This document shows, piece after piece, positions 4,741 through 48,419 of a stretch of DNA of 64,000 bases. The DNA lies in IMG/VR virus record IMGVR_UViG_3300035698_035310, positions 186,001 through 250,000 of that record. One strand, given 5' to 3'. Below the pieces are notes generated by a model. That model was not told where the DNA came from. It searched no databases and saw nothing but the letters and a program-made list of their open reading frames with translations. The position numbers and the translations under genes were made by a program. Positions within the stretch are counted from its first letter, which is position 1. Each line of letters opens with the position of its first letter.

Positions 4741-5133
4741 TCAATCCCAACGCCCCCGTTTCTCCCAATACTTCTTCCACTTATTGAAACTGCCACCACC
4801 TTTGGGATTCATATCAAGACGATACACTGCCAACTTTGTTCGATCCCGCAATCGACGTTCGACTTGCTGTAGATATAACGTCCACGGATCAGGTTTATAT
4901 ATTTTCTTGGAGCCTTTTTTACTATTGCATGTATCACAAGCAACAACAATATTAGTAACCGAATGAATCCGATTGATTTTACTTAATGGAATAACATGAT
5001 CAGCAGTTGCCGATTTACGTGTTAACTTACAACCACAATAGTAACACTTATTGGTTTGATCTTCTAAAATATTATCGCGGTCAATGGTATAAAATATTCT
5101 ATCCATTTTCGATTGAAACTTGATTTTGCTCAT
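4741..5133 (-). CDS. HNH endonuclease
   Basis: CYYCG...TADHVIPLS...NIVVACDTCNSKKG. Confidence 0.9.
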   Translation of the reverse strand: MSKIKFQSKMDRIFYTIDRDNILEDQTNKCYYCGCKLTRKSATADHVIPLSKINRIHSVTNIVVACDTCNSKKGSKKIYKPDPWTLYLQQVERRLRDRTKLAVYRLDMNPKGGGSFNKWKKYWEKRGRWD

Positions 5134-5134
5134 A

Positions 5135-5608
5135 TTATTTTATTTTAATACACCATCGTCTTTTATGTTTTAAATCATACGCCGTAACAAGATAATGCTT
5201 AGATGTCACGACGTGATGATTGTATTGTATTTGTGCACATGATCCTTGTTTTTTATTAGAGAATGTAGCTAACTCCATCGCGATTTCATTTTCTTTAGAT
5301 ATGCTGGCGGCTTCAGAATGATATAATTCAAAATCATCAAGGTATATTTCACCATTAATCGTATAACTAACACCCACAACTATTGTGTCACTGCGAATGT
5401 TTCCACTAGAACTAGATAATAACCCACCAATCCATTTTCCATCCAATATATTATCATCAACGGATATCACCGTAACCATTAATGGTGATAATACAACTGT
5501 TACGGGAGGATGATTTCTATTATACGATTGAACGGCTATATATATAATTGCCAATATCACAATCGCCCAAATAATGTTAAATTTATAAGTACTCAAAAAT
5601 TTGTTCAT
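5135..5608 (-). CDS. membrane-anchored hypothetical protein
   Basis: N-terminal TM helix; GGAG RBS. Confidence 0.6.
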   Translation of the reverse strand: MNKFLSTYKFNIIWAIVILAIIYIAVQSYNRNHPPVTVVLSPLMVTVISVDDNILDGKWIGGLLSSSSGNIRSDTIVVGVSYTINGEIYLDDFELYHSEAASISKENEIAMELATFSNKKQGSCAQIQYNHHVVTSKHYLVTAYDLKHKRRWCIKIK

Positions 5609-6168
5609 TTTTTTCTCCTATATCGTTTTATATCCATCGTAGCATTATAGCCATGCCATCCTCTTCTGACGTTGTATACGCAACATTACCACGATTTGTT
5701 AGTTTTTTAGGGGTAACATTATTCAACGAACGTTTAGATTTATCGGTCAGTGTTCCATTATTACGCATTTCACGTATCTTGTCAACTGTTATAAATCCTT
5801 CATATAATACAACAATGCCAGAACGTTTCATTACAACTGCATATATTTTATTTTCAAAACACCAATCTTCAATTTCAACCAAGTCTATGTCTTCACCGTT
5901 GGGTAATGTTATTTCATATAAATCATGATGTATAAACTTTATCGCACTCAATAATGGTTCTTGAAATATATCTGGAATTTTCTGCATAGTTATCCTTTTA
6001 TTTTTTTTATCGTCACATTTGTGCTAATTAATAAATCTTTTTGGTAGATATCAAACTCGTAAAATATTTCTGCCATATCATAACACACCACAACAATATA
6101 TGTCAAGATGCTTGACACATGTAAATATAGATGATACAGTTTTAATATAACCAATAAAGGAGAATATT

Positions 6169-16283: not shown

Positions 16284-16342
16284 TTATAGATTGGCTTAAA
16301 TCAGCCATTTCAATCGTGGTCTGCCGTGGGGAGGAGACGGTT
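16284..16342 (+). repeat. direct repeat DR1 (about 58 bp), left flank of the inverted gene block
   Basis: ttatagattggcttaaatcagccatttcaatc...ccgtggggaggagacggtt is highly similar to 17977-18034. Confidence 0.8.
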
Positions 16343-23031: not shown

Positions 23032-24891
23032 ATGGGATTAATACTGAATAGAATAGCGTATAGCAAAAATAATTGTTATAGGATAAATTACACATATAAT
23101 GGAGATATGGTGTCCAATGATGGATGGGTTGAGATGTCTTTATTTACGTTTGGCAGGCAAGTTGAACACAATTGGATAACTATGGATATGTTATTGGATA
23201 TGATCAACATTGATTATGAAGTATCTATAAGTGTGGCACAGTTATGAGAGATTTAACGGGTGAGATATTAAAAAGCATAGAGGAATTGATTAATACTACA
23301 TTACCGGATACACCGGAACGCAAAAGGGTTTCTGCACTTGGTGATGAAATACTTGATACATTAAGAATTCATCATGATATTGTAACGACGGTATATATAG
23401 TGAAGACGTTATATATAAAGAAAGATAATGGTAAGTATATTGTCATCAATAAAATGTTTAATGGTACAATATGTATATATAAGTATGACACTATTCTTGA
23501 CATAGTTAAGTTTGGTAAATTTGGATTAGATGAACTCATGAAAATGGATAACACATATGAAGATTCGGTTGTGGCACAGTTATGAGACTACTTAATGAAG
23601 ATCAATTGGAAGAACTTATGGATGCGATGATCAGGGATATGGTGGAGTATGAACTTACGGGTATTGAGGTATTGTTTTGGATGATAGAAGAAATACCACA
23701 ACTTGAAGCTATGGTATATATACGCAATGAATGAAGATGATCGATGGATGATACAGAAGACGATGATACGGAAGGTTCCATTACCGGTTAAGCGTCGTGT
23801 TATGCCGACAGTTATTGCGAATAACGTAGTTGGTGTATCACCGATGGCTCCACCGGTTAAGTCTATTCATACGATGCGGTTTGAGGATTACAGTGATTTA
23901 GAGATGGAAGAGGTTTTATACCGGTTGATTTTTGGCGGGACGGGACATTATTATCAGGTATGGTTATTCAATGAAGTTATTGATAATGATATGATGGTTA
24001 ACAGGGATGTATCAATTGGCAACGTTTGATGTTAGTAAGTTTAATAAGTTTAGGGTGCCAGTTGATAACCATAAAGGTATGTTACATTCTGGTATAAATG
24101 TGTATACGAACCCGTATATAAGATTGTTATCATCGCGCAATGCGCCGATTGAAGATTTAATAATAGTGATATTGAGAAATTCTATTGGTGTTGGTCAAGA
24201 AGCATTATTTAAACATATAAATCCACCGGTATTGGATAGCCATGTTACTATAGAACCCATAGGTGTTGATGAATAGGTCTTATGGGTTTCATAGGTCTTG
24301 AGCCATAGGTTTCATAGCATAGGTGCTATGGGTTTCATAGCATAGGTGCTATGGGTTTCATAGGAATAAAGCTATAGGAGTTATTGATGGCAATAAATGA
24401 TAGCAAATTACGCGGGGTGATTAAGTATACTATAGTTACGGATGATGGAGGGAAACCGATGACAAAGTTATTAGAAACTACTTGGGGAGAAGCCAAACGT
24501 GCATTAATGGAGGATCGTCGTTACACTGTCACTTATAAAGGATTTTCACATGTTGGTGACACTTATATAGATGCAATGTTACAATTAGTTCGATGGCGCA
24601 GTTTGGCGCGTGATGCTACTAATATGCATGAAGAACTGTTTGATATATTGAGTTCATATATAATTGAACGGGATGTATCGATAAGTGTCTTATAGATTAT
24701 TGATGATATTATTAGAATATCGTGCAGAGTTAGTATATCCATATACATATGAAGTATTAACACAAAGTAATACATCATATGTCCGTGTGACTAAAAAGCA
24801 GGAAGTTTTATGTGATATAATTGCGTCGCAGGAAAATTTATCGAAAATTATTTTTATAAATTGCGGAGAAATTTTAATTTCGGAGATTTGA
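23032..24891 (+). CDS. cluster of small AT-rich hypothetical genes with related C-termini (SISVAQL, SVVAQL, DVSIGNV, DVSISVL)
   Basis: ORFs 23032, 23244, 23703, 24007, 24384 and 24685; tails resemble those at 786-1530. Confidence 0.5.
24256..24380. repeat. degenerate tandem repeat of CATAGGTGCTATGGGTTTCATAG
   Basis: Exact ATAGGTGCTAT cores at 24319 and 24342 (23-bp period) with degenerate copies on both sides. Confidence 0.8.
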
Positions 24892-24980: not shown

Positions 24981-25134
24981 TAATTTCCTATTTTTCCTTT
25001 TTTCAAATATGACTGTTTCCTCCTTGACCCCAAGATACCAGATTTTGACCGTCCTGTCAAGTCTTTTCTTTAGTCCAGTTAGTTGATAGTTGGCACACTT
25101 ATTGCTGTCGCATGAATCGCGCCAAAATAAGTGC

Positions 25135-27864: not shown

Positions 27865-27906
27865 AAAAAATGCCTCACTGATCCTTTCACAGTGGGGCAT
27901 TTTTTT
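27865..27906 (+). terminator. intrinsic terminator
   Basis: AAAAAATGCCTCACTG / CAGTGGGGCATTTTTT. Confidence 0.75.
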
Positions 27907-27967
27907 GTCTTGACATATATGAATGATTGGGTTATCATGGTATACTTAACAATAAAGGGAATATTAC

Positions 27968-28501
27968 ATGAGTGATGATACGATAGACTTTCCGGGAACT
28001 ACGTCTAAAGCTCCGTCGAATGATCATGGTCCAATTATTGATTATAATACATTGATTCGTGCTGCTCATTTGAATGTTGTTAAAGACGCGATTCAAATCG
28101 TTTCGGATACTGGTCCTGCTGAATTCTTTAATATCAATATTACTTATGATTTGATGCACCCTGATTCGGTATCTGAAGAATGGTTGTGGAAGAAATATCC
28201 TGAGAAGATTACCATTATACTTAACAACCAATATGAAAACTTACACGTTGAGGACACTGGCTTTCGTGTCACCTTACATTTCGGTGGTTCTCCGGTTGCG
28301 TTGTTTGTTCCGTTTGATTCTATACTCAGTTATGTTGATATGGTTACGCGGGTTATGTTTTCGTTTGAAGACCCACATGCTAATGAACCAGTTGACAATC
28401 CATTTGAATCGGTTGATACGCCAGATATTAAATTGGTTCCTGATGCTGGCGCGGAAGTTATATCGTTGGACGCATTTAGGGATAAGAATAAAAAGGATTG
28501 A
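27968..28501 (+). CDS. sspB: alphaproteobacterial-type ClpXP adaptor SspB
   Basis: IDY..L...A...VV; KKYPEKITIILNNQY..L.V...GFRVTLHFGG....L.VPFDSI...VD; C-terminal ClpX-binding-type AEVISLDAFR. Confidence 0.85.
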   Translation: MSDDTIDFPGTTSKAPSNDHGPIIDYNTLIRAAHLNVVKDAIQIVSDTGPAEFFNINITYDLMHPDSVSEEWLWKKYPEKITIILNNQYENLHVEDTGFRVTLHFGGSPVALFVPFDSILSYVDMVTRVMFSFEDPHANEPVDNPFESVDTPDIKLVPDAGAEVISLDAFRDKNKKD

Positions 28502-32720: not shown

Positions 32721-33521
32721 ATGGCTAAAGTTAAAGACCCAAACGGTTATGTAATTTATCGCGGCCCTTCAATGTTAGATGGTGCGCCTATTGTTATGGT
32801 GGCGACGGGGTTTGCAGATAAGAGTTTGAATAGCAAGACTGGTCATATGATACAGACTTGGATTATTCGGGAAGACATCAATCCGCATGTAGCAACGAAT
32901 TCAGGCGAGGATTCAAGTGTGTGTGGTGCATGCCCACACCGAGGCGACCTTAACCCTGACGTAGATTCGCCTACTGGTTTCAAGAACACTGGACGTTCAT
33001 GTTACGTTAAAGTATGGCAAGCCCCGACTCATGTATGGCGTGCCTTTGAACGTGGTTCATATGATGAAATTTCATTGTATGATATCCCTAATCTATTCAA
33101 GGACAAGGCTGTTCGGTTAGGTTCTTATGGCGACCCTGCGGCTGTTCCGTTTTGGCTAATCGACGCGATTGGTCAATCTAGTGATTTCACAACAGGATAT
33201 ACCCACCAATGGCGTGATTGTGATCGTGATTATGGTAAGTGGCTTATGGCTAGTGCCGATAATAACGCAGACCGGTTTTGGGCGCGTTCCTCTGGATTCA
33301 GAACGTTTCGTGTTCGCGGTGCTGACGACGCATTAGGCAAGAAAGAAATTGCGTGCCCTGCTAGTGAAGAGATGGGTAGAAAGACGAATTGCGCTGAGTG
33401 TAAAGCGTGCGGTGGACACAATGCCAAAGCAAACGTAGACATATCCATCATGACTCATGGTGCATTAAAGAATAACTATTACAAGCGTGCCGACGCGTTT
33501 GAATACAGAAAGGCGGCATAA
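32721..33521 (+). CDS. Cys-rich conserved phage protein of unknown function
   Basis: GPSMLDG.PI...NSKTG.M.QTWI...CG.CPHR...CYV...RLG.YGDP...GYTHQW...CPAS...C..C..C. Confidence 0.75.
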   Translation: MAKVKDPNGYVIYRGPSMLDGAPIVMVATGFADKSLNSKTGHMIQTWIIREDINPHVATNSGEDSSVCGACPHRGDLNPDVDSPTGFKNTGRSCYVKVWQAPTHVWRAFERGSYDEISLYDIPNLFKDKAVRLGSYGDPAAVPFWLIDAIGQSSDFTTGYTHQWRDCDRDYGKWLMASADNNADRFWARSSGFRTFRVRGADDALGKKEIACPASEEMGRKTNCAECKACGGHNAKANVDISIMTHGALKNNYYKRADAFEYRKAA

Positions 33522-35821: not shown

Positions 35822-35895
35822 GGGGGCATAGCTCAGTGGTAGAGCAGTGGGTTCTAAACCCTTTGTCGGGAGTTCGACTCTCCCTGCCCTCGCCA
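35822..35895 (+). tRNA. tRNA with CUA anticodon (amber suppressor), Trp-like body
   Basis: Acceptor GGGGGCA/TGCCCTC, D arm GCTC/GAGC, anticodon loop TT-CTA-AA, T arm GGGAG-TTCGACT-CTCCC, G73 and encoded CCA; own TTGACA promoter at 35785. Confidence 0.92.
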
Positions 35896-35915: not shown

Positions 35916-36392
35916 ATGTCGGCAATTACTGATTTTTACCAAGGGTTCGGAACTGATGATAAAGGACGCTCACTTGATGATTACTTATTGTTCTCAGATG
36001 AACAATTAGAATCGGTTCATGATTATATCCAGTGGATGTTTCCCAACACGGAAGTCAGCCGATTTAATATCGATGCACCATTGCTTACAGATGCTGACAT
36101 TGAATTGTTTATGAATGACATACCAATGATGAACAATGTAACGTTGGCGTGTGCACGCATGACTAAATTTTATAAGTTTTCCAATATATATGTTGATGCA
36201 GAGAGACAATGGGTTACACAAGGCAATCATAATTTTTTACGACTTACTCGTATGTTGAAATTTCTTCGATCTATAAACAAAAATTATGAAGCAGAGTCGT
36301 TGTTTGTTATGCTTGCTAGAGTTTATTCAGATAATTCATTCGTGGTTGGCAAAGACACACTTCGGTATTGGTTGGACGCAGCAGAGAGTTAA
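35916..36392 (+). CDS. OGFr (opioid growth factor receptor) conserved-region domain protein
   Basis: LESVHDYIQWMFP...HNFLRLTRMLKFL. Confidence 0.85.
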   Translation: MSAITDFYQGFGTDDKGRSLDDYLLFSDEQLESVHDYIQWMFPNTEVSRFNIDAPLLTDADIELFMNDIPMMNNVTLACARMTKFYKFSNIYVDAERQWVTQGNHNFLRLTRMLKFLRSINKNYEAESLFVMLARVYSDNSFVVGKDTLRYWLDAAES

Positions 36393-36997: not shown

Positions 36998-39184
36998 ATG
37001 CAAATCAAAACAGAAAATCGAGAAGTTGGGCGTTCCGGCACTTCAAACGAACGGACGTTTAACATCGATATGACTGCCAAGGCATTTAAGATTCTATCCG
37101 ACGGATTGTATTCGGATAAAATTCTTGCTGTTGTTCGTGAACTTTCTTGTAATGCCAAGGATTCACATATCGACGCTGGCAAAAATGACGTGCCTTTCGA
37201 AATTCACCTACCGAATTCACTTGAGCCGTGGTTCGCGGTTACTGATTACGGACTTGGGTTATCACCTGACGATGTATTGGAAATGTATTCCACTTATTTT
37301 GCTTCAACCAAAACGGGTTCAAACGATGTAACGGGGTGTCTTGGACTTGGTTCTAAATCGCCTTTTGCTTATACCGATTCGTTTTCAGTTGAAACACGTT
37401 GGAATGGCACACTTACTGTATTTTCATGTTTCTATAACGAGGCAGGTATCCCCTCAATCGTTATTTTGGGTGACGAAGACGGAATGCCTACCGACGAAGT
37501 GAACGGCGTTACCGTTAAAATGGCTGTAAACGATGGTGACATGCGCGAATTCGCACAAAAGGCAATGAAGGCACTTGATCGCTTTGATCCTGCCCCTATC
37601 GTTACTGGTAACACTGATTATGAAATTGTTACTAAGACTTATACGGTTGAAGGCAAAGGCTGGAAGATGCTTGAACGTGAAAGTTCATATGGTGAAAGCA
37701 AAATCCATGCTATCCAAGGCAATGTAACATATCCAATTAGTTCACAATCATTAGGCGACTTGACAAGCAATCAAGATGCAATTATGGGATTGACAGTTGA
37801 TTTGTTCTTTGATATCGGCGAGTTGGACGTTGCGGCAAACCGCGAGGCGTTGGGTTATGATGAAGCAACGATTAAAAATATCAAGGCTAAACTTGATGCC
37901 GTATCGACTGAAATTGCCCCATTGTTTCAGGATAAATTTAAGGATTGTAAAACACTTTGGGATGCGCGTTTGTTGTTCAAAGAAGTGATCAATCCTTTGA
38001 CATCTGGCTTGCAACGGATTCTATCTGACAACAATGTTGGGTTGAAATGGAAAAAGCAATCACTATCTGATTCGTTCAAATTGGATCGCGATGATTTTCC
38101 TAACGTTCAGATTGTATCATTCCAAAAGAATACACGCGGTGGACGTGGGCAAACTGCGGAATGGAGTTATAACGGTGATATTAAATTCCCCGCCAGTTCC
38201 GATATTCTGTTTTTCTATGACGATGTTGGCAATGGTTCGCATAGCCGAGTGACTCATTTTATGGAAACAAATGGTGACTCTGTTCGTTATCAGCATATGT
38301 TCAAAACCGACGATAAAAAAATGATGAAAAAGATTTCTAAGGCGTTGGGTAATGTTACTATTCAACCTGTAAGCAATCTTGAAAAACGCCCCAAGGCTGT
38401 TCGCCAAGCGCGACGAGTTACATCAAAGGTTTTGGAATATGTTGGACGCGCCCATGATCGCCGTGATAGTTGGAATCCTACTGATCTGGATTTAACGACT
38501 GGTGGTGTTTATGTTATGATTGATCGCTTTAAGGTATATGATTCCAATAATGGTTCAGGACGTGAACGTGAAGATTTTAACACCATTGTCGATTTGGCGA
38601 AAGAACATAAAATCGTTGACTTGACTAACAAGATCGTTTATGGAATTCGTAAAGGTGATGTTGATAAATTGAAAGATGATTCTGGTTGGGTTAATCTTTT
38701 CGACCTGATCCGCGACAAACTTACGGTTGCGGTTAAAAAAGAAAAGGTGGCGCAAGTTATGGCTGACCGTTATGCCTATCACCAGTTTTCAAATGATTTA
38801 TCATCGTTCGTTAATGATATGGATGATACTGATTTGGCAAAGGATTCAGTTATTGGAATATTCAAACGCGCACATGAATATCTTTCAAACCGTGATTCAT
38901 CTAAGGCACAAGCGATTTCAAGTGTTGCGGATAGCGTAGGATTTACGTTAAAATCTGCCAAGCCAAAACACGATCTTGGGAAACTTTGGGACGCTGTTAA
39001 AAATAAGTATCCATTATTGAAACTTGTTTCTGACAGTGATTTGCGCGGCGGTTATTACAACAATCGCGACAACTCTATCAGTGAAAATAACCATGCGGCA
39101 TTGACTGATTATATCGCGATGGTTGACGCAAAAGACGCAGTGCCAGAAAAGCGTAAAATCCTTACGTTGGCCTCGGCGGCATAA
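36998..39184 (+). CDS. rIIA: rIIA protein (GHKL ATPase N-terminus)
   Basis: LSDGLYSDKILAVVRELSCNAKDSH...TDYGLG...STK...GCLGLGSKSPFAYT; directly upstream of rIIB. Confidence 0.9.
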   Translation: MQIKTENREVGRSGTSNERTFNIDMTAKAFKILSDGLYSDKILAVVRELSCNAKDSHIDAGKNDVPFEIHLPNSLEPWFAVTDYGLGLSPDDVLEMYSTYFASTKTGSNDVTGCLGLGSKSPFAYTDSFSVETRWNGTLTVFSCFYNEAGIPSIVILGDEDGMPTDEVNGVTVKMAVNDGDMREFAQKAMKALDRFDPAPIVTGNTDYEIVTKTYTVEGKGWKMLERESSYGESKIHAIQGNVTYPISSQSLGDLTSNQDAIMGLTVDLFFDIGELDVAANREALGYDEATIKNIKAKLDAVSTEIAPLFQDKFKDCKTLWDARLLFKEVINPLTSGLQRILSDNNVGLKWKKQSLSDSFKLDRDDFPNVQIVSFQKNTRGGRGQTAEWSYNGDIKFPASSDILFFYDDVGNGSHSRVTHFMETNGDSVRYQHMFKTDDKKMMKKISKALGNVTIQPVSNLEKRPKAVRQARRVTSKVLEYVGRAHDRRDSWNPTDLDLTTGGVYVMIDRFKVYDSNNGSGREREDFNTIVDLAKEHKIVDLTNKIVYGIRKGDVDKLKDDSGWVNLFDLIRDKLTVAVKKEKVAQVMADRYAYHQFSNDLSSFVNDMDDTDLAKDSVIGIFKRAHEYLSNRDSSKAQAISSVADSVGFTLKSAKPKHDLGKLWDAVKNKYPLLKLVSDSDLRGGYYNNRDNSISENNHAALTDYIAMVDAKDAVPEKRKILTLASAA

Positions 39185-39340
39185 GAAACTCCTACCTAGC
39201 CCGTAGGTGGCAGGGTTGAACGGTGATTGACTTCTTCTGTTTAATCCTGCCAAACTAATTTGAAATGAGTGCTTGACAATATAACAAATGGTGGTAATAT
39301 TCATTATCACATTCGGAAACCAACTAGGAGACTAAAACTT

Positions 39341-40492
39341 ATGAAAACGATTCAAGCCGCAATTATCGCCCAAAATTCAATCACACTTATGATTGACGGG
39401 CAAACTACGCCTATCGCCTCTTCGCATACAAACTATGAAGAAATTCGTGGACTTGCTGCCGCTGGCAACTATGCACCAATTGCATCATTGCTTGATATGG
39501 TTCAGGTTATTAACGACTTTGGTAAAGGACGCGTTACCGTTGAAAACGGTGAAGTTCTTTATGATGGTAAGCCTACCCATAACGCGGTGACTTCGCGTAT
39601 CCTTCAAATGGTTGAAGAAGGTTTGGAAGTTTCACCAATGGTTGCATTCCTTGATAACCTTATGGATAACCCTTCATTCCGTTCCGTTCAACAGTTATAC
39701 GGTTTCTTGGAAGTGAACGACCTTCCGATCACGGAAGACGGTTTCTTTCTTGCCTATAAAATGTGCGCCGAGGTTAATGGTAAATTGACTGATATTCGCA
39801 CGCAAACGTTTGATTATAGCGTTGGCGCAAAACCTGCCGAAATGCCACGTAACGAAGTGAACGAAGACCCTGATCAAACTTGTTCTTCTGGTTTGCACGT
39901 ATGCGCCCAAGGTTATCTTGGTTCATACAGTTCTGGCGAACATACGATTTTGGTTAAAGTTAATCCTGCCGATGTTGTTGCAGTTCCGACTGACTACAAT
40001 AACGCCAAAATGCGGGTAAGCAAACATGAAACCGTTTGTAAGGTTACTGCGCGAACTCGCGGTGCTGTATATACCAGTGCGGTTTATACCCCTTCGGCGG
40101 ATTCAAAAAGCACACTGGTAAATGGCGATGATTTGCTTACGCTGGATGAAGCAGTTGACGTTCTTGGGCTTAAGGGTGCTAAAAATCCAATTGCCGCACT
40201 ACGTAAGCGCCTATCGCGTGCAAAGCTGACTTCTAACCCTAAACTCAAGTCGGTTTTCAAAGATGGTGTTGAAATGATTCAAATCATCCAAACGGAGGCC
40301 GACGATGTTGAAGTTGCTGACGATTCGGTTATGACTCACGTTGATGCAATCGCATACTTTGCCAAGCAAAACAAAGCCAATGGCAAGGCACAACCAGCCG
40401 ACCCGAAAGCGGCATTGCGTAAAATGCTTAATCGTGAATCTGCTTGCAAGCGCGTTTACGTTGATGGTGTTGAGATGATCAAAATTCTTTAA
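39341..40492 (+). CDS. rIIB: rIIB protein with a duplicated C-terminal extension
   Basis: FLDNLMDNPS.RSV.QLYGFL....LPITEDG.FLAYK...MPRNEV.EDP.QTCS.GLHV...VKVNPADVV.VP.DYNNAKMR. Confidence 0.92.
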   Translation: MKTIQAAIIAQNSITLMIDGQTTPIASSHTNYEEIRGLAAAGNYAPIASLLDMVQVINDFGKGRVTVENGEVLYDGKPTHNAVTSRILQMVEEGLEVSPMVAFLDNLMDNPSFRSVQQLYGFLEVNDLPITEDGFFLAYKMCAEVNGKLTDIRTQTFDYSVGAKPAEMPRNEVNEDPDQTCSSGLHVCAQGYLGSYSSGEHTILVKVNPADVVAVPTDYNNAKMRVSKHETVCKVTARTRGAVYTSAVYTPSADSKSTLVNGDDLLTLDEAVDVLGLKGAKNPIAALRKRLSRAKLTSNPKLKSVFKDGVEMIQIIQTEADDVEVADDSVMTHVDAIAYFAKQNKANGKAQPADPKAALRKMLNRESACKRVYVDGVEMIKIL

Positions 40493-48366: not shown

Positions 48367-48419
48367 TACAAATCCTTTCAGTGGGGATAGTATAGAACCA
48401 TCCCCACTGATGTCAAGGG

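What the first reader, a model, noticed from the sequence alone, without database searches (positions are those of the whole stretch)
27968..28501. Phage-encoded SspB adaptor for the host ClpXP protease
Seen: full alpha-type SspB fold motifs plus the C-terminal SLDAFR ClpX-docking motif, and a promoter immediately upstream (TTGACA near 27910). Established: alpha-SspB tethers ssrA-tagged substrates to ClpX. Inference: the phage redirects or saturates ClpXP, which in alphaproteobacteria controls cell-cycle regulators.
Basis: partly seen in the sequence, partly recalled or inferred. Interest (0 to 1): 0.6.

Follow-up and report, generated by a model that had tools for sequence, protein, structure and literature searches.

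The report
Giant-phage SspB adaptor with own ClpXP
A giant salt-lake phage carries a genuine alpha-type SspB protease adaptor, but it also carries its own ClpX, ClpP, ClpA and ClpS, so the adaptor most likely serves a phage-borne protein-degradation kit rather than only hijacking the host's.

Summary
Its closest solved relatives by sequence are the Caulobacter and Agrobacterium alpha-type SspB proteins. Its predicted core fold matches Caulobacter SspB (TM 0.90, rmsd 1.5 A). It ends in VISLDAFRDK, the tail motif kept by nearly all alpha-type homologues. A TTGACA-N17-TATCAT promoter-like site lies 30 nt upstream.

The interpretation needs revising. The genome is a T4/Rak2-like giant phage: a 359-kb record cut from a ~570-kb contig from salt-lake metagenomes. 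It encodes its own canonical ClpX, a ClpP, a ClpA-like ATPase, ClpS and a stand-alone ClpX zinc-finger protein. A sister phage contig also carries both SspB (30% identical) and ClpX (81%).

The nearest SspB relatives sit in phage-like gene arrays. On a quick tree they group apart from bacterial SspB at moderate support. Eleven of the 18 grouped sequences, this one included, share a conserved N-terminal extension, and those share altered core residues.

Phage SspB-like genes were already reported (pf16 gp18, RAY gp039, phiKZ-like phages). This is therefore a new member of a known kind. ClpX binding and cargo remain untested: the complex prediction gave no verdict. An alphaproteobacterial host is not shown.

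The parts
27865..27905 (+). Terminator-like hairpin (16-bp stem, then a U run) that closes the upstream transcription unit
   Evidence: strand folding: -21.2 kcal/mol, z -5.81, 0 of 200 shuffles as stable
27910..27938 (+). Sigma-70-like promoter TTGACA-N17-TATCAT, one of 38 such sites in the window (early-gene type)
   Evidence: 11/12 match; pattern occurs 38 times against 1.6 expected, strand-consistent with genes
27955..27960 (+). Shine-Dalgarno-like AAGGGA, 7 nt before the ATG
   Evidence: read directly from the sequence
27968..28501 (+). sspB-like gene, 177 aa (P0001)
   Evidence: ORF; Pfam SspB 64 bits; identical protein on contigs from several metagenome samples
27968..28033 (+). N-terminal extension, residues 1-22, with the conserved short motif MSDD-x-I-x-F-P; lower-confidence, probably disordered; absent from bacterial alpha-SspB
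   Evidence: Shared by 11 of the 150 best representatives, all on the phage side of the tree; F8 kept in 90% or more of alignment A2; pLDDT 67-68
28034..28372 (+). SspB substrate-binding core, residues 23-135: long N-terminal helix plus beta-sandwich
   Evidence: pLDDT above 90; TM 0.90 and rmsd 1.5 A to Caulobacter SspB 2QAS
28373..28456 (+). Variable acidic/proline-rich linker, residues 136-163
   Evidence: pLDDT 63-81, no secondary structure; unconserved in alignments
28457..28486 (+). C-terminal tail motif VISLDAFRDK, residues 164-173: the alpha-type counterpart of the SspB ClpX-binding (XB) segment
   Evidence: Aligns with VVSLDAFRKK of 2NYS; L167/D168/F170/R171 kept in 87-99% of homologues; unique in the genome

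Best explanation
The gene encodes a functional alpha-type SspB tethering adaptor of a giant T4/Rak2-like phage from a salt lake.

Shown here:
- It has the SspB core fold, a flexible linker and the family's conserved C-terminal tail motif.
- It has its own sigma-70-like early-type promoter, placed after a terminator.
- The same genome encodes a canonical ClpX with the zinc-finger N-domain that SspB tails dock on, plus ClpP, a ClpA-like ATPase and ClpS.
- SspB and ClpX are co-carried in a sister phage.

Inferred:
- Early in infection the host RNA polymerase transcribes the gene.
- The dimeric core binds a peptide tag on cargo. By default these are ssrA-tagged, incomplete polypeptides, which should surge when host mRNAs are destroyed.
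- The VISLDAFR tail docks on ClpX N-domains. The main partner is the phage's own ClpX, and host ClpX is possibly engaged as well.
- This lowers the Km for degradation by ClpXP, which recycles amino acids and keeps proteostasis going in a phage that also carries 32 tRNAs and an EF-G-like gene within the 359-kb record, and release-factor-like and GroES genes just beyond its left end on the same contig.
For: Family, fold and tail.

Promoter and terminator.

Phage nature: DNA polymerase phrog_262, RIIA and tail fibre. The nearest DNA polymerases are Phosso at 45% and Atu_ph07 at 43%.

Phage Clp kit:
- ClpX, 419 aa, with zf-C4_ClpX at E 8e-16 and AAA_2.
- ClpX motifs GPTGCGKT, IDEIDK, GYVG, RKH, IGF and GARGLR are all present.
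- ClpP at E 2e-80.
- ClpA-like protein, 752 aa, with Clp_N and two AAA modules.
- ClpS at E 1.4e-30.

Co-carriage: contig qPBGTKUL (256,814 bp) holds SspB homologue P0004 and ClpX P0153 (81% identical) in the same EF-G-like/AAA/ClpX synteny.

The SspB phage lineage is old and maintained:
- All six contexts I inspected, the window's own included (P0001, P0002, P0004, P0015, P0007, P0021), lie in phage-like arrays of small unannotated same-strand genes. Only three of those contigs are long (30.6 kb or more).
- The tail motif is retained throughout.

General mechanism of SspB (native domain binds the tag, disordered C-terminal segment binds the ClpX N domain): PMC9963277.

The XB-ZBD interaction is conserved across species and works wherever the motif sits in the polypeptide: PMC12373786.
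Against: - No binding was shown. The one complex prediction gave no verdict.
- Several residues strongly conserved in bacterial alpha-SspB are changed in this protein and in the sequences that share its N-terminal extension: H54 to F/Y, H55 to N/C/S, Q86 to N, F89 to Y, P125 to variable. The cargo therefore need not be the ssrA tag.
- The phage has no tmRNA gene.
- The phage ClpX N-domain lacks the L-L-Y/T-L-Y residues that precede the first Cys in bacterial ClpX. Its tail-binding surface may differ.
- The nearest cultured relatives, Atu_ph07 and Phosso, have ClpX but no SspB. SspB is therefore not obligatory for phage ClpX.
- Expression was never observed; no RNA runs hold the sequence.
Confidence: 0.58

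Rival explanations
1. This is the first reader's model: the adaptor acts on the host ClpXP. It redirects or saturates it, for example by competing with host adaptors for ClpX N-domains, and so perturbs host regulated proteolysis such as cell-cycle control in an alphaproteobacterium.
For: - The gene is of early-promoter type.
- The alpha-type tail motif is nearly identical to the bacterial consensus, so host ClpX of an alphaproteobacterium should accept it.
- SspB-ClpX docking works across species (PMC12373786).
- SspB would be made before phage ClpX accumulates if ClpX is expressed later; this was not tested.
Against: - The phage brings its own ClpX, ClpP, ClpA and ClpS, and co-carriage of SspB and ClpX is conserved in a sister phage.
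- The host is unknown, and no host signal comes from ClpX.
- Nothing links the protein to cell-cycle substrates.
Confidence: 0.17
2. It is a retargeted degrader. The phage lineage kept the ClpX-docking tail but remodelled the peptide groove and gained an N-terminal motif. It delivers a non-ssrA cargo, such as a host defence or regulatory protein or a phage early protein that must be cleared, to ClpXP.
For: - Signature substitutions occur at positions conserved in bacterial alpha-SspB: G49 to P, H54 to Y/F, H55 to N/C/S, Q86 to N (in all of them), F89 to Y. They were measured in the 11 sequences that share the N-terminal extension. W72 is invariant in the 12 aligned phage-side sequences.
- The N-terminal MSDD-x-I-x-F-P extension is found in 11 sequences, all on the phage side of the tree.
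- SspB diverges far faster than its neighbours. SspB is 30% identical where ClpX is 81% in the same phage pair, and 34% where a nearby 266-aa protein is 64%. That is as expected for a host- or target-tracking surface.
- E. coli SspB is known to carry a second cargo, RseA (cited in PMC5587285).
Against: - Which residues line the alpha-SspB groove could not be checked, because Chien et al. 2007 is not held.
- The changes are conservative (Q to N, H to Y/N) and could simply track a host-specific ssrA tag.
- No candidate cargo was identified.
Confidence: 0.15
3. It is an inhibitor or decoy rather than a deliverer. It shields tagged proteins from ClpAP or blocks ClpX N-domains, perhaps together with the phage's stand-alone ClpX zinc-finger protein, to protect phage proteins from degradation.
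For: - SspB blocks ClpAP recognition of ssrA-tagged proteins in E. coli (PMC9963277).
- A competitive-inhibitor role was proposed for phage pf16 SspB (PMC5587285).
- The genome has a ZBD-only protein of 122 aa that could bind XB tails.
Against: - The full adaptor architecture (core, linker and tail) is conserved, and an intact ClpX/ClpP pair is co-encoded. This fits delivery better.
- There is no evidence of a truncated or altered tail.
Confidence: 0.07
4. It is a non-functional passenger gene recently picked up from a bacterium.
For: - SspB is absent from Atu_ph07 and Phosso.
- It lies in a region of small accessory genes.
Against: - The best bacterial identity is only about 30-40%.
- The nearest relatives are phage-borne and group together on the quick tree.
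- Fold-critical residues and both terminal motifs are conserved across that lineage.
- GC content and promoter are those of the phage.
Confidence: 0.03

Closest known systems
Caulobacter crescentus SspB-alpha (PDB 2QAS/2QAZ) and Agrobacterium AGR_C_3712p (2NYS)
   Same: They share the Pfam family and the core fold (TM 0.90-0.91, rmsd 1.3-1.5 A). Both have the same architecture of core, variable linker and a C-terminal [VI][VI]SLDAFR[KD]K tail.
   Different: - Identity is only 26-30%.
- The phage protein has a 22-residue N-terminal extension with a conserved I-x-F-P motif.
- Residues conserved in bacteria are changed: HH to FN, QHQ to NNQ, D-P to D-M.
- It is encoded by a phage, next to unrelated early genes, and not in a bacterial chromosome.
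Phage-encoded SspB-like proteins: Pseudomonas phage pf16 gp18, Erwinia phage RAY gp039, and phiKZ-like and other jumbo phages (Noxifer, PhiPA3, 201phi2-1, Rebecca, phiA8-29)
   Same: These are SspB-fold proteins encoded by large lytic phages and annotated or proposed as ClpXP adaptors. RAY gp039 is cytoplasmic (PMC5587285; PMC10299810; BFVD hits).
   Different: - They belong to a different SspB lineage. tblastn finds none of them.
- BFVD TM-scores are at most 0.54 and identity at most 18%.
- The protein matches no PHROG.
- I did not check whether those phages carry their own ClpX.
Clp gene sets of Rak2-like giant phages (Agrobacterium phage Atu_ph07, Sinorhizobium phage Phosso)
   Same: These are the nearest cultured relatives by DNA polymerase (43-45%). 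They encode ClpX (50-55% identical to this phage's). Atu_ph07 is reported to carry ClpX, ClpA, ClpB, ClpP and ClpS.
   Different: Neither genome has an SspB by the Pfam profile. This phage lineage adds the ClpX adaptor and a stand-alone ClpX zinc-finger protein.
E. coli / H. influenzae SspB (1OU8, 1OX9, 8ET3)
   Same: Same general fold (TM 0.58-0.69) and the same tethering logic.
   Different: There is no detectable sequence match by phmmer. The tail motif is different: LRVVK-type against SLDAFR-type.

Membership tests
SspB (Pfam PF04386), alpha-proteobacterial type | Sequence matches the family profile above the curated threshold | tested here: met
   64.1 bits against a cut-off of 27, E 1.9e-17; 1628 homologues at E<=1e-3
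SspB (Pfam PF04386), alpha-proteobacterial type | SspB core fold, closest to the alpha-type structures | tested here: met
   AF2 pLDDT 85.7; 2QAS TM 0.90 with rmsd 1.5 A; 2NYS TM 0.91; gamma-type TM 0.58-0.69
SspB (Pfam PF04386), alpha-proteobacterial type | Disordered linker ending in the conserved C-terminal tail motif ([VI][VI]SLDxFRKK) | tested here: met
   VISLDAFRDK at residues 164-173; aligned to 2NYS; conservation 87-99%
SspB (Pfam PF04386), alpha-proteobacterial type | The tail binds the ClpX N-terminal zinc-binding domain | tested here: inconclusive
   Complex prediction of phage ClpX 1-55 (two copies) with SspB 141-177: score 0.20 against a mark of 0.34, no verdict
SspB (Pfam PF04386), alpha-proteobacterial type | The core binds the N-terminal part of the ssrA tag | not testable with these tools
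   Host and its tag are unknown. Groove residues of SspB-alpha could not be looked up. Several conserved core residues are changed.
SspB (Pfam PF04386), alpha-proteobacterial type | Homodimer | not tested
   The long N-terminal helix (residues 26-48) is present in the model. No dimer was modelled.
Previously reported phage SspB-like proteins (pf16 gp18, RAY gp039, phiKZ-like) | Encoded in a bona fide phage genome | tested here: met
   T4-type DNA polymerase, RIIA and tail fibre; relatives Phosso and Atu_ph07
Previously reported phage SspB-like proteins (pf16 gp18, RAY gp039, phiKZ-like) | Detectable sequence or close structural kinship to those proteins | tested here: not met
   The only tblastn hit in 50,697 phage records is a mislabelled bacterial fragment. 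BFVD TM at most 0.54, identity at most 18%. No PHROG.
Phage-borne Clp proteolysis kit (as in Atu_ph07) | The phage encodes a ClpX with an N-terminal zinc finger and a ClpP-docking IGF loop, plus ClpP | tested here: met
   A ClpA-like ATPase and ClpS are also present.

The most novel reading that the evidence does not exclude
The phage SspB lineage may be a remodelled, fast-evolving 'degrader'. The conserved N-terminal MSDD-x-I-x-F-P peptide would be a second docking motif: XB-like for ClpX zinc-binding domains, or for another Clp component. The altered groove would capture a host defence or regulatory protein. The phage's stand-alone ClpX zinc-finger protein would soak up host adaptors. Together these would make a phage-autonomous, retargeted ClpXP pathway.
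Probability: 0.15. Interest if true: 0.75.

Novelty: new member of a known kind. Interest (0 to 1): 0.42.

Why it matters
No phage-encoded SspB has a demonstrated function. This locus offers a self-contained set of parts from one genome: adaptor, ClpX, ClpP, ClpA, ClpS and a zinc-finger-only protein. They can be reconstituted in vitro to ask why giant phages carry their own regulated proteolysis.

The phage-side SspB relatives keep the ClpX-docking tail while the cargo-binding core diverges quickly (30% identity where ClpX is 81%). That would be a natural example of adaptor retargeting. [quoted passage not shown]

The finding also flags a likely ~570-kb phage genome that a provirus caller appears to have truncated.

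Tried and rejected
- **Complex prediction.** Complex prediction of phage ClpX N-domain dimer (with Zn) and the SspB tail scored 0.20 and 0.18 against a mark of 0.34, which is no verdict. I do not use it either way.
- **Word-index protein search** with SspB found only the protein itself. I therefore used the exhaustive search once, because relatives and novelty were open.
- **IMG/VR scans** with the single protein and with the phage-clade alignment found no relative. The 89-sequence alignment was too diverse to scan with.
- **Metagenome scan** returned 80 loci. All have GC of 0.43 or more (79 of them 0.49-0.69) and share only SspB with this genome, so they are bacterial and not phage relatives. 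Their records cannot be searched for ClpX.
- **The only phage-database hit**, MT836065.1, is a bacterial fragment: alaS, thyA and folA lie beside sspB.
- **Host inference from ClpX failed.** Identity is 54-59% to gamma-, alpha- and beta-proteobacteria alike, and the zinc-finger domain is no closer to alpha than to gamma.
- **PHROGs and NCBIfam** gave nothing useful for SspB. Neighbouring genes have no informative families.
- **Papers not held.** The papers that define the SspB-alpha groove and the ZBD-XB contacts (Chien 2007, Lessner 2007, Thibault 2006) are not held. Residue-level statements about them are not made.
- **No tmRNA** was found in the 359-kb record by ARAGORN, and no RNA family other than a tRNA was found in the window by Rfam.
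- **TAG recoding**, suggested by two tRNA(CTA) genes, was tested and not supported. No alternative genetic code was used.
- **Reads.** No RNA runs hold the sequence.
- **Motif search.** A search for other proteins with XB-like tails or the N-terminal motif in the genome found none.

Full report
**1. The observation**

The ORF is real. window:27968-28501 on the + strand encodes 177 residues. The ATG is preceded by AAGGGA 7 nt upstream.

- It passes the Pfam SspB model well above threshold: 64.1 bits against 27, E 1.9e-17.
- Against all PDB sequences it finds only the alpha-proteobacterial type. These are Caulobacter SspB (2QAS, 2QAZ) and the Agrobacterium orthologue 2NYS, at E 6e-12 to 3e-10. 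The E. coli and H. influenzae proteins are not found.
- An AlphaFold2 model built on 89 homologues has mean pLDDT 85.7. The core, residues 23-135, is above 90. Both termini have lower confidence.
- The core superposes on 2QAS at TM 0.90 and rmsd 1.5 A. On gamma-type SspB structures it reaches only TM 0.58-0.69.
In the 2NYS alignment, VVSLDAFRKK pairs with VISLDAFRDK.
- Nearly all of the best 150 homologues end in [VI][VI]SLDxFRKK. L167, D168, F170 and R171 are kept in 87-99% of the 78 homologues that lack the N-terminal extension.
- The motif occurs once among 1182 ORFs of the genome.

The promoter is also real as a pattern.

- TTGACA-N17-TATCAT lies at 27910-27938.
- TTGACA-N16-18-TATNNT occurs 38 times in the window against 1.6 expected. 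Sites are on the - strand up to about 25 kb (one exception at 16,341) and on the + strand after that (one exception at 48,389), following the genes.
- A strong hairpin with a U run at 27865-27905 precedes it.
- The gene is therefore a separately promoted unit of the early, host-polymerase type.

**2. What the genome is**

The window lies at 186,001-250,000 of a 359,044-bp virus record with 36% GC and 32 tRNA genes.

- It has a T4-type DNA polymerase, RIIA (window 36998-39184) and tail-fibre-like proteins.
- Its nearest cultured relatives by polymerase are Sinorhizobium phage Phosso (45%) and Agrobacterium phage Atu_ph07 (43%), followed by Rak2-like phages of enterobacteria.
- The record is labelled 'provirus', but it is a piece of a ~570.5-kb contig.
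- The 9.6 kb beyond its left end has the same GC and the same promoter motif. It carries more giant-phage-style genes: GroES, GreA, a release-factor-like gene and an ADP-ribosylglycohydrolase.
- The cut therefore looks like an artefact.
- The sequence recurs in salt-lake metagenomes from 11 studies. No RNA run holds it.

**3. The key context: the phage has its own Clp system**

Profile searches of the genome found the following.

- A 419-aa ClpX (C1:5982-7241) with the zinc-finger N-domain, and with Walker A and B, GYVG pore loop, RKH loop, IGF loop and sensor-2 motifs.
- A 208-aa ClpP, E 2e-80, with GQAASMG and IHQP motifs read from the sequence. A second, divergent ClpP-like protein is also present.
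- A 752-aa ClpA-like ATPase.
- ClpS.
- A 122-aa protein that is a ClpX zinc finger fused to an unrelated C-terminal domain.

Atu_ph07 was already reported to carry seven Clp-family genes (PMC6102473). Atu_ph07 and Phosso both have ClpX, but neither has SspB by the Pfam profile.

**4. Relatives of this SspB**

The word-index search found only the protein itself. Because relatives and novelty were open, I ran the exhaustive search. It gave 1628 homologues, the best only 37% identical.

- Eleven of the top 150 share an N-terminal extension with the motif MSDD-(G)-I-I-x-F-P that bacterial alpha-SspB lacks.
- In a quick maximum-likelihood tree, these eleven plus seven others fall on one side of a branch (SH-aLRT 89) against 71 others. 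The careful tree did not finish, so this support is moderate.
- All six contexts I could inspect on that side (P0001, P0002, P0004, P0015, P0007, P0021) are arrays of small, unannotated, same-strand genes. Three of those contigs are under 5 kb.
- One context, L031, has 40.6% GC, the same promoter motif and a 266-aa protein 64% identical to window 32721-33521.
- The controls are bacterial. P0011 sits among metabolic genes. The 'phage' hit MT836065.1 carries alaS, thyA and folA. Eighty metagenome loci have GC of 0.43-0.69, 79 of them 0.49 or more, and share nothing but SspB with this genome.
- Against the bacterial consensus, the eleven extension-bearing sequences change G49 to P, H54 to Y/F, H55 to N/C/S, Q86 to N (in all of them), F89 to Y and P125 to variable. 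W72 is invariant in the 12-sequence alignment of these plus P0002.

**5. Co-carriage with ClpX**

A ClpX 81% identical to the phage's (P0153) lies on the same 256,814-bp contig (key qPBGTKUL, ERZ24794644) as SspB homologue P0004. It has the same EF-G-like/AAA/ClpX synteny.

P0004 is only 30% identical to this SspB. The adaptor has therefore been kept alongside phage ClpX while diverging much faster than it.

**6. Mechanism**

Established knowledge comes from two papers.

- SspB's native domain binds the first residues of the ssrA tag. A disordered C-terminal region ends in a segment that binds the ClpX N domain. SspB also blocks ClpAP recognition of tagged proteins (PMC9963277).
- The XB-ZBD interaction is conserved across species and is independent of where the motif sits (PMC12373786).

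My recollection, which I could not check because Chien et al. 2007 is not held, is that the alpha-type tail has the same role.

I therefore take the protein to be a working tethering adaptor whose most economical partner is the phage's own ClpXP. Host ClpX remains a possible second partner. Cargo is ssrA-tagged polypeptides by default. The altered core residues and the N-terminal motif leave room for a retargeted cargo.

Binding itself was not shown. The single complex prediction gave no verdict.

**7. Comparison and novelty**

Phage SspB-like genes are on record.

- pf16 gp18 was said to be the first, with a proposed competitive role at RseA (PMC5587285).
- RAY gp039 is a cytoplasmic 'putative SspB-like ClpXP adaptor' (PMC10299810).
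- BFVD lists SspB-like folds in phiKZ-like and other phages.

These belong to another SspB lineage: TM at most 0.54, identity at most 18%, and no tblastn or PHROG match.

This is therefore a new member of a known kind. It is an alpha-type, phage-specific SspB lineage linked to a phage-encoded ClpXP. It is not a new kind of system.

**8. Limits**

- The host is unassigned.
- No expression data exist.
- The groove residues are not mapped.
- No alternative genetic code was used; TAG recoding was tested and not supported.

Noticed in passing
window 35822-35895 (+); also genome C1:28369-28446: There are two tRNA genes with anticodon CTA (amber-suppressor type; ARAGORN calls them tRNA-Pyl). Reading TAG through adds less ORF cover than TGA or TAA would. 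TAG still ends 34 of 301 long ORFs. There is therefore no sign of TAG recoding.
   Followed up: partly
whole window; strand switch near 25,060/25,135: TTGACA-N16-18-TATNNT occurs 38 times against 1.6 expected. Sites lie on the - strand up to about 25 kb and on the + strand after it, with one exception each way (16,341 + and 48,389 -). Most small genes have their own site. This looks like two divergent blocks of early genes read by the host sigma-70 polymerase.
   Followed up: partly
L198:1-9653 (beyond the left end of the 359-kb record): The record is part of a ~570.5-kb contig. The flank has the same 36% GC and the same promoters. It encodes GroES, GreA/GreB, a release-factor-like protein, a NADAR-domain protein and an ADP-ribosylglycohydrolase. 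The 'provirus' boundary looks artefactual, and the phage may be about 570 kb.
   Followed up: partly
genome C1:150342-150710 (-) and the two ORFs upstream of it (L008:1264-2496): There is a stand-alone ClpX zinc-finger protein of 122 aa. Its C-terminal domain recurs in two adjacent paralogues, and all three end in ..FKLRW[IL]. It could bind adaptor tails as a decoy or scaffold.
   Followed up: no
genome C1:1618-3735, 4768-5928, 143868-146126, 97806-98042, 324828-325454, 296983-297627: The genome carries a large proteostasis and translation set: an EF-G-like protein (705 aa), an AAA ATPase next to ClpX, a ClpA-like ATPase, ClpS, ClpP and a second ClpP-like protein.
   Followed up: partly
P0001 vs P0004; ClpX vs P0153 (sister contig of 256,814 bp): Between the same two phages, SspB is 30% identical while ClpX is 81%. 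In L031, SspB is 34% identical while a nearby 266-aa protein is 64%. The adaptor evolves unusually fast.
   Followed up: partly
window 35916-36392 (+): A 158-aa protein matches the OGFr_N family (opioid growth factor receptor conserved region) at E 6e-13. This is an odd family for a phage.
   Followed up: no
window ~23766-23888 (+): A 113-aa ORF matches only the first ~40 positions of the T4 Gp23 major-capsid profile (28.5 bits). No full Gp23 or Terminase_6C match was found in the 359-kb record.
   Followed up: no
L030 (MT836065.1, 'UNVERIFIED: Bacteriophage sp.', human faecal sample): This is the only phage-database record with a relative of this SspB. It carries alaS, thyA, folA and a typical sspB at 50% GC, so it looks like a bacterial fragment filed as a phage.
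   Followed up: yes
window 36998-40492 (+): RIIA (728 aa, phrog_612, E 5e-127) is followed by a 407-aa ORF without a Pfam match that sits where RIIB would be.
   Followed up: no
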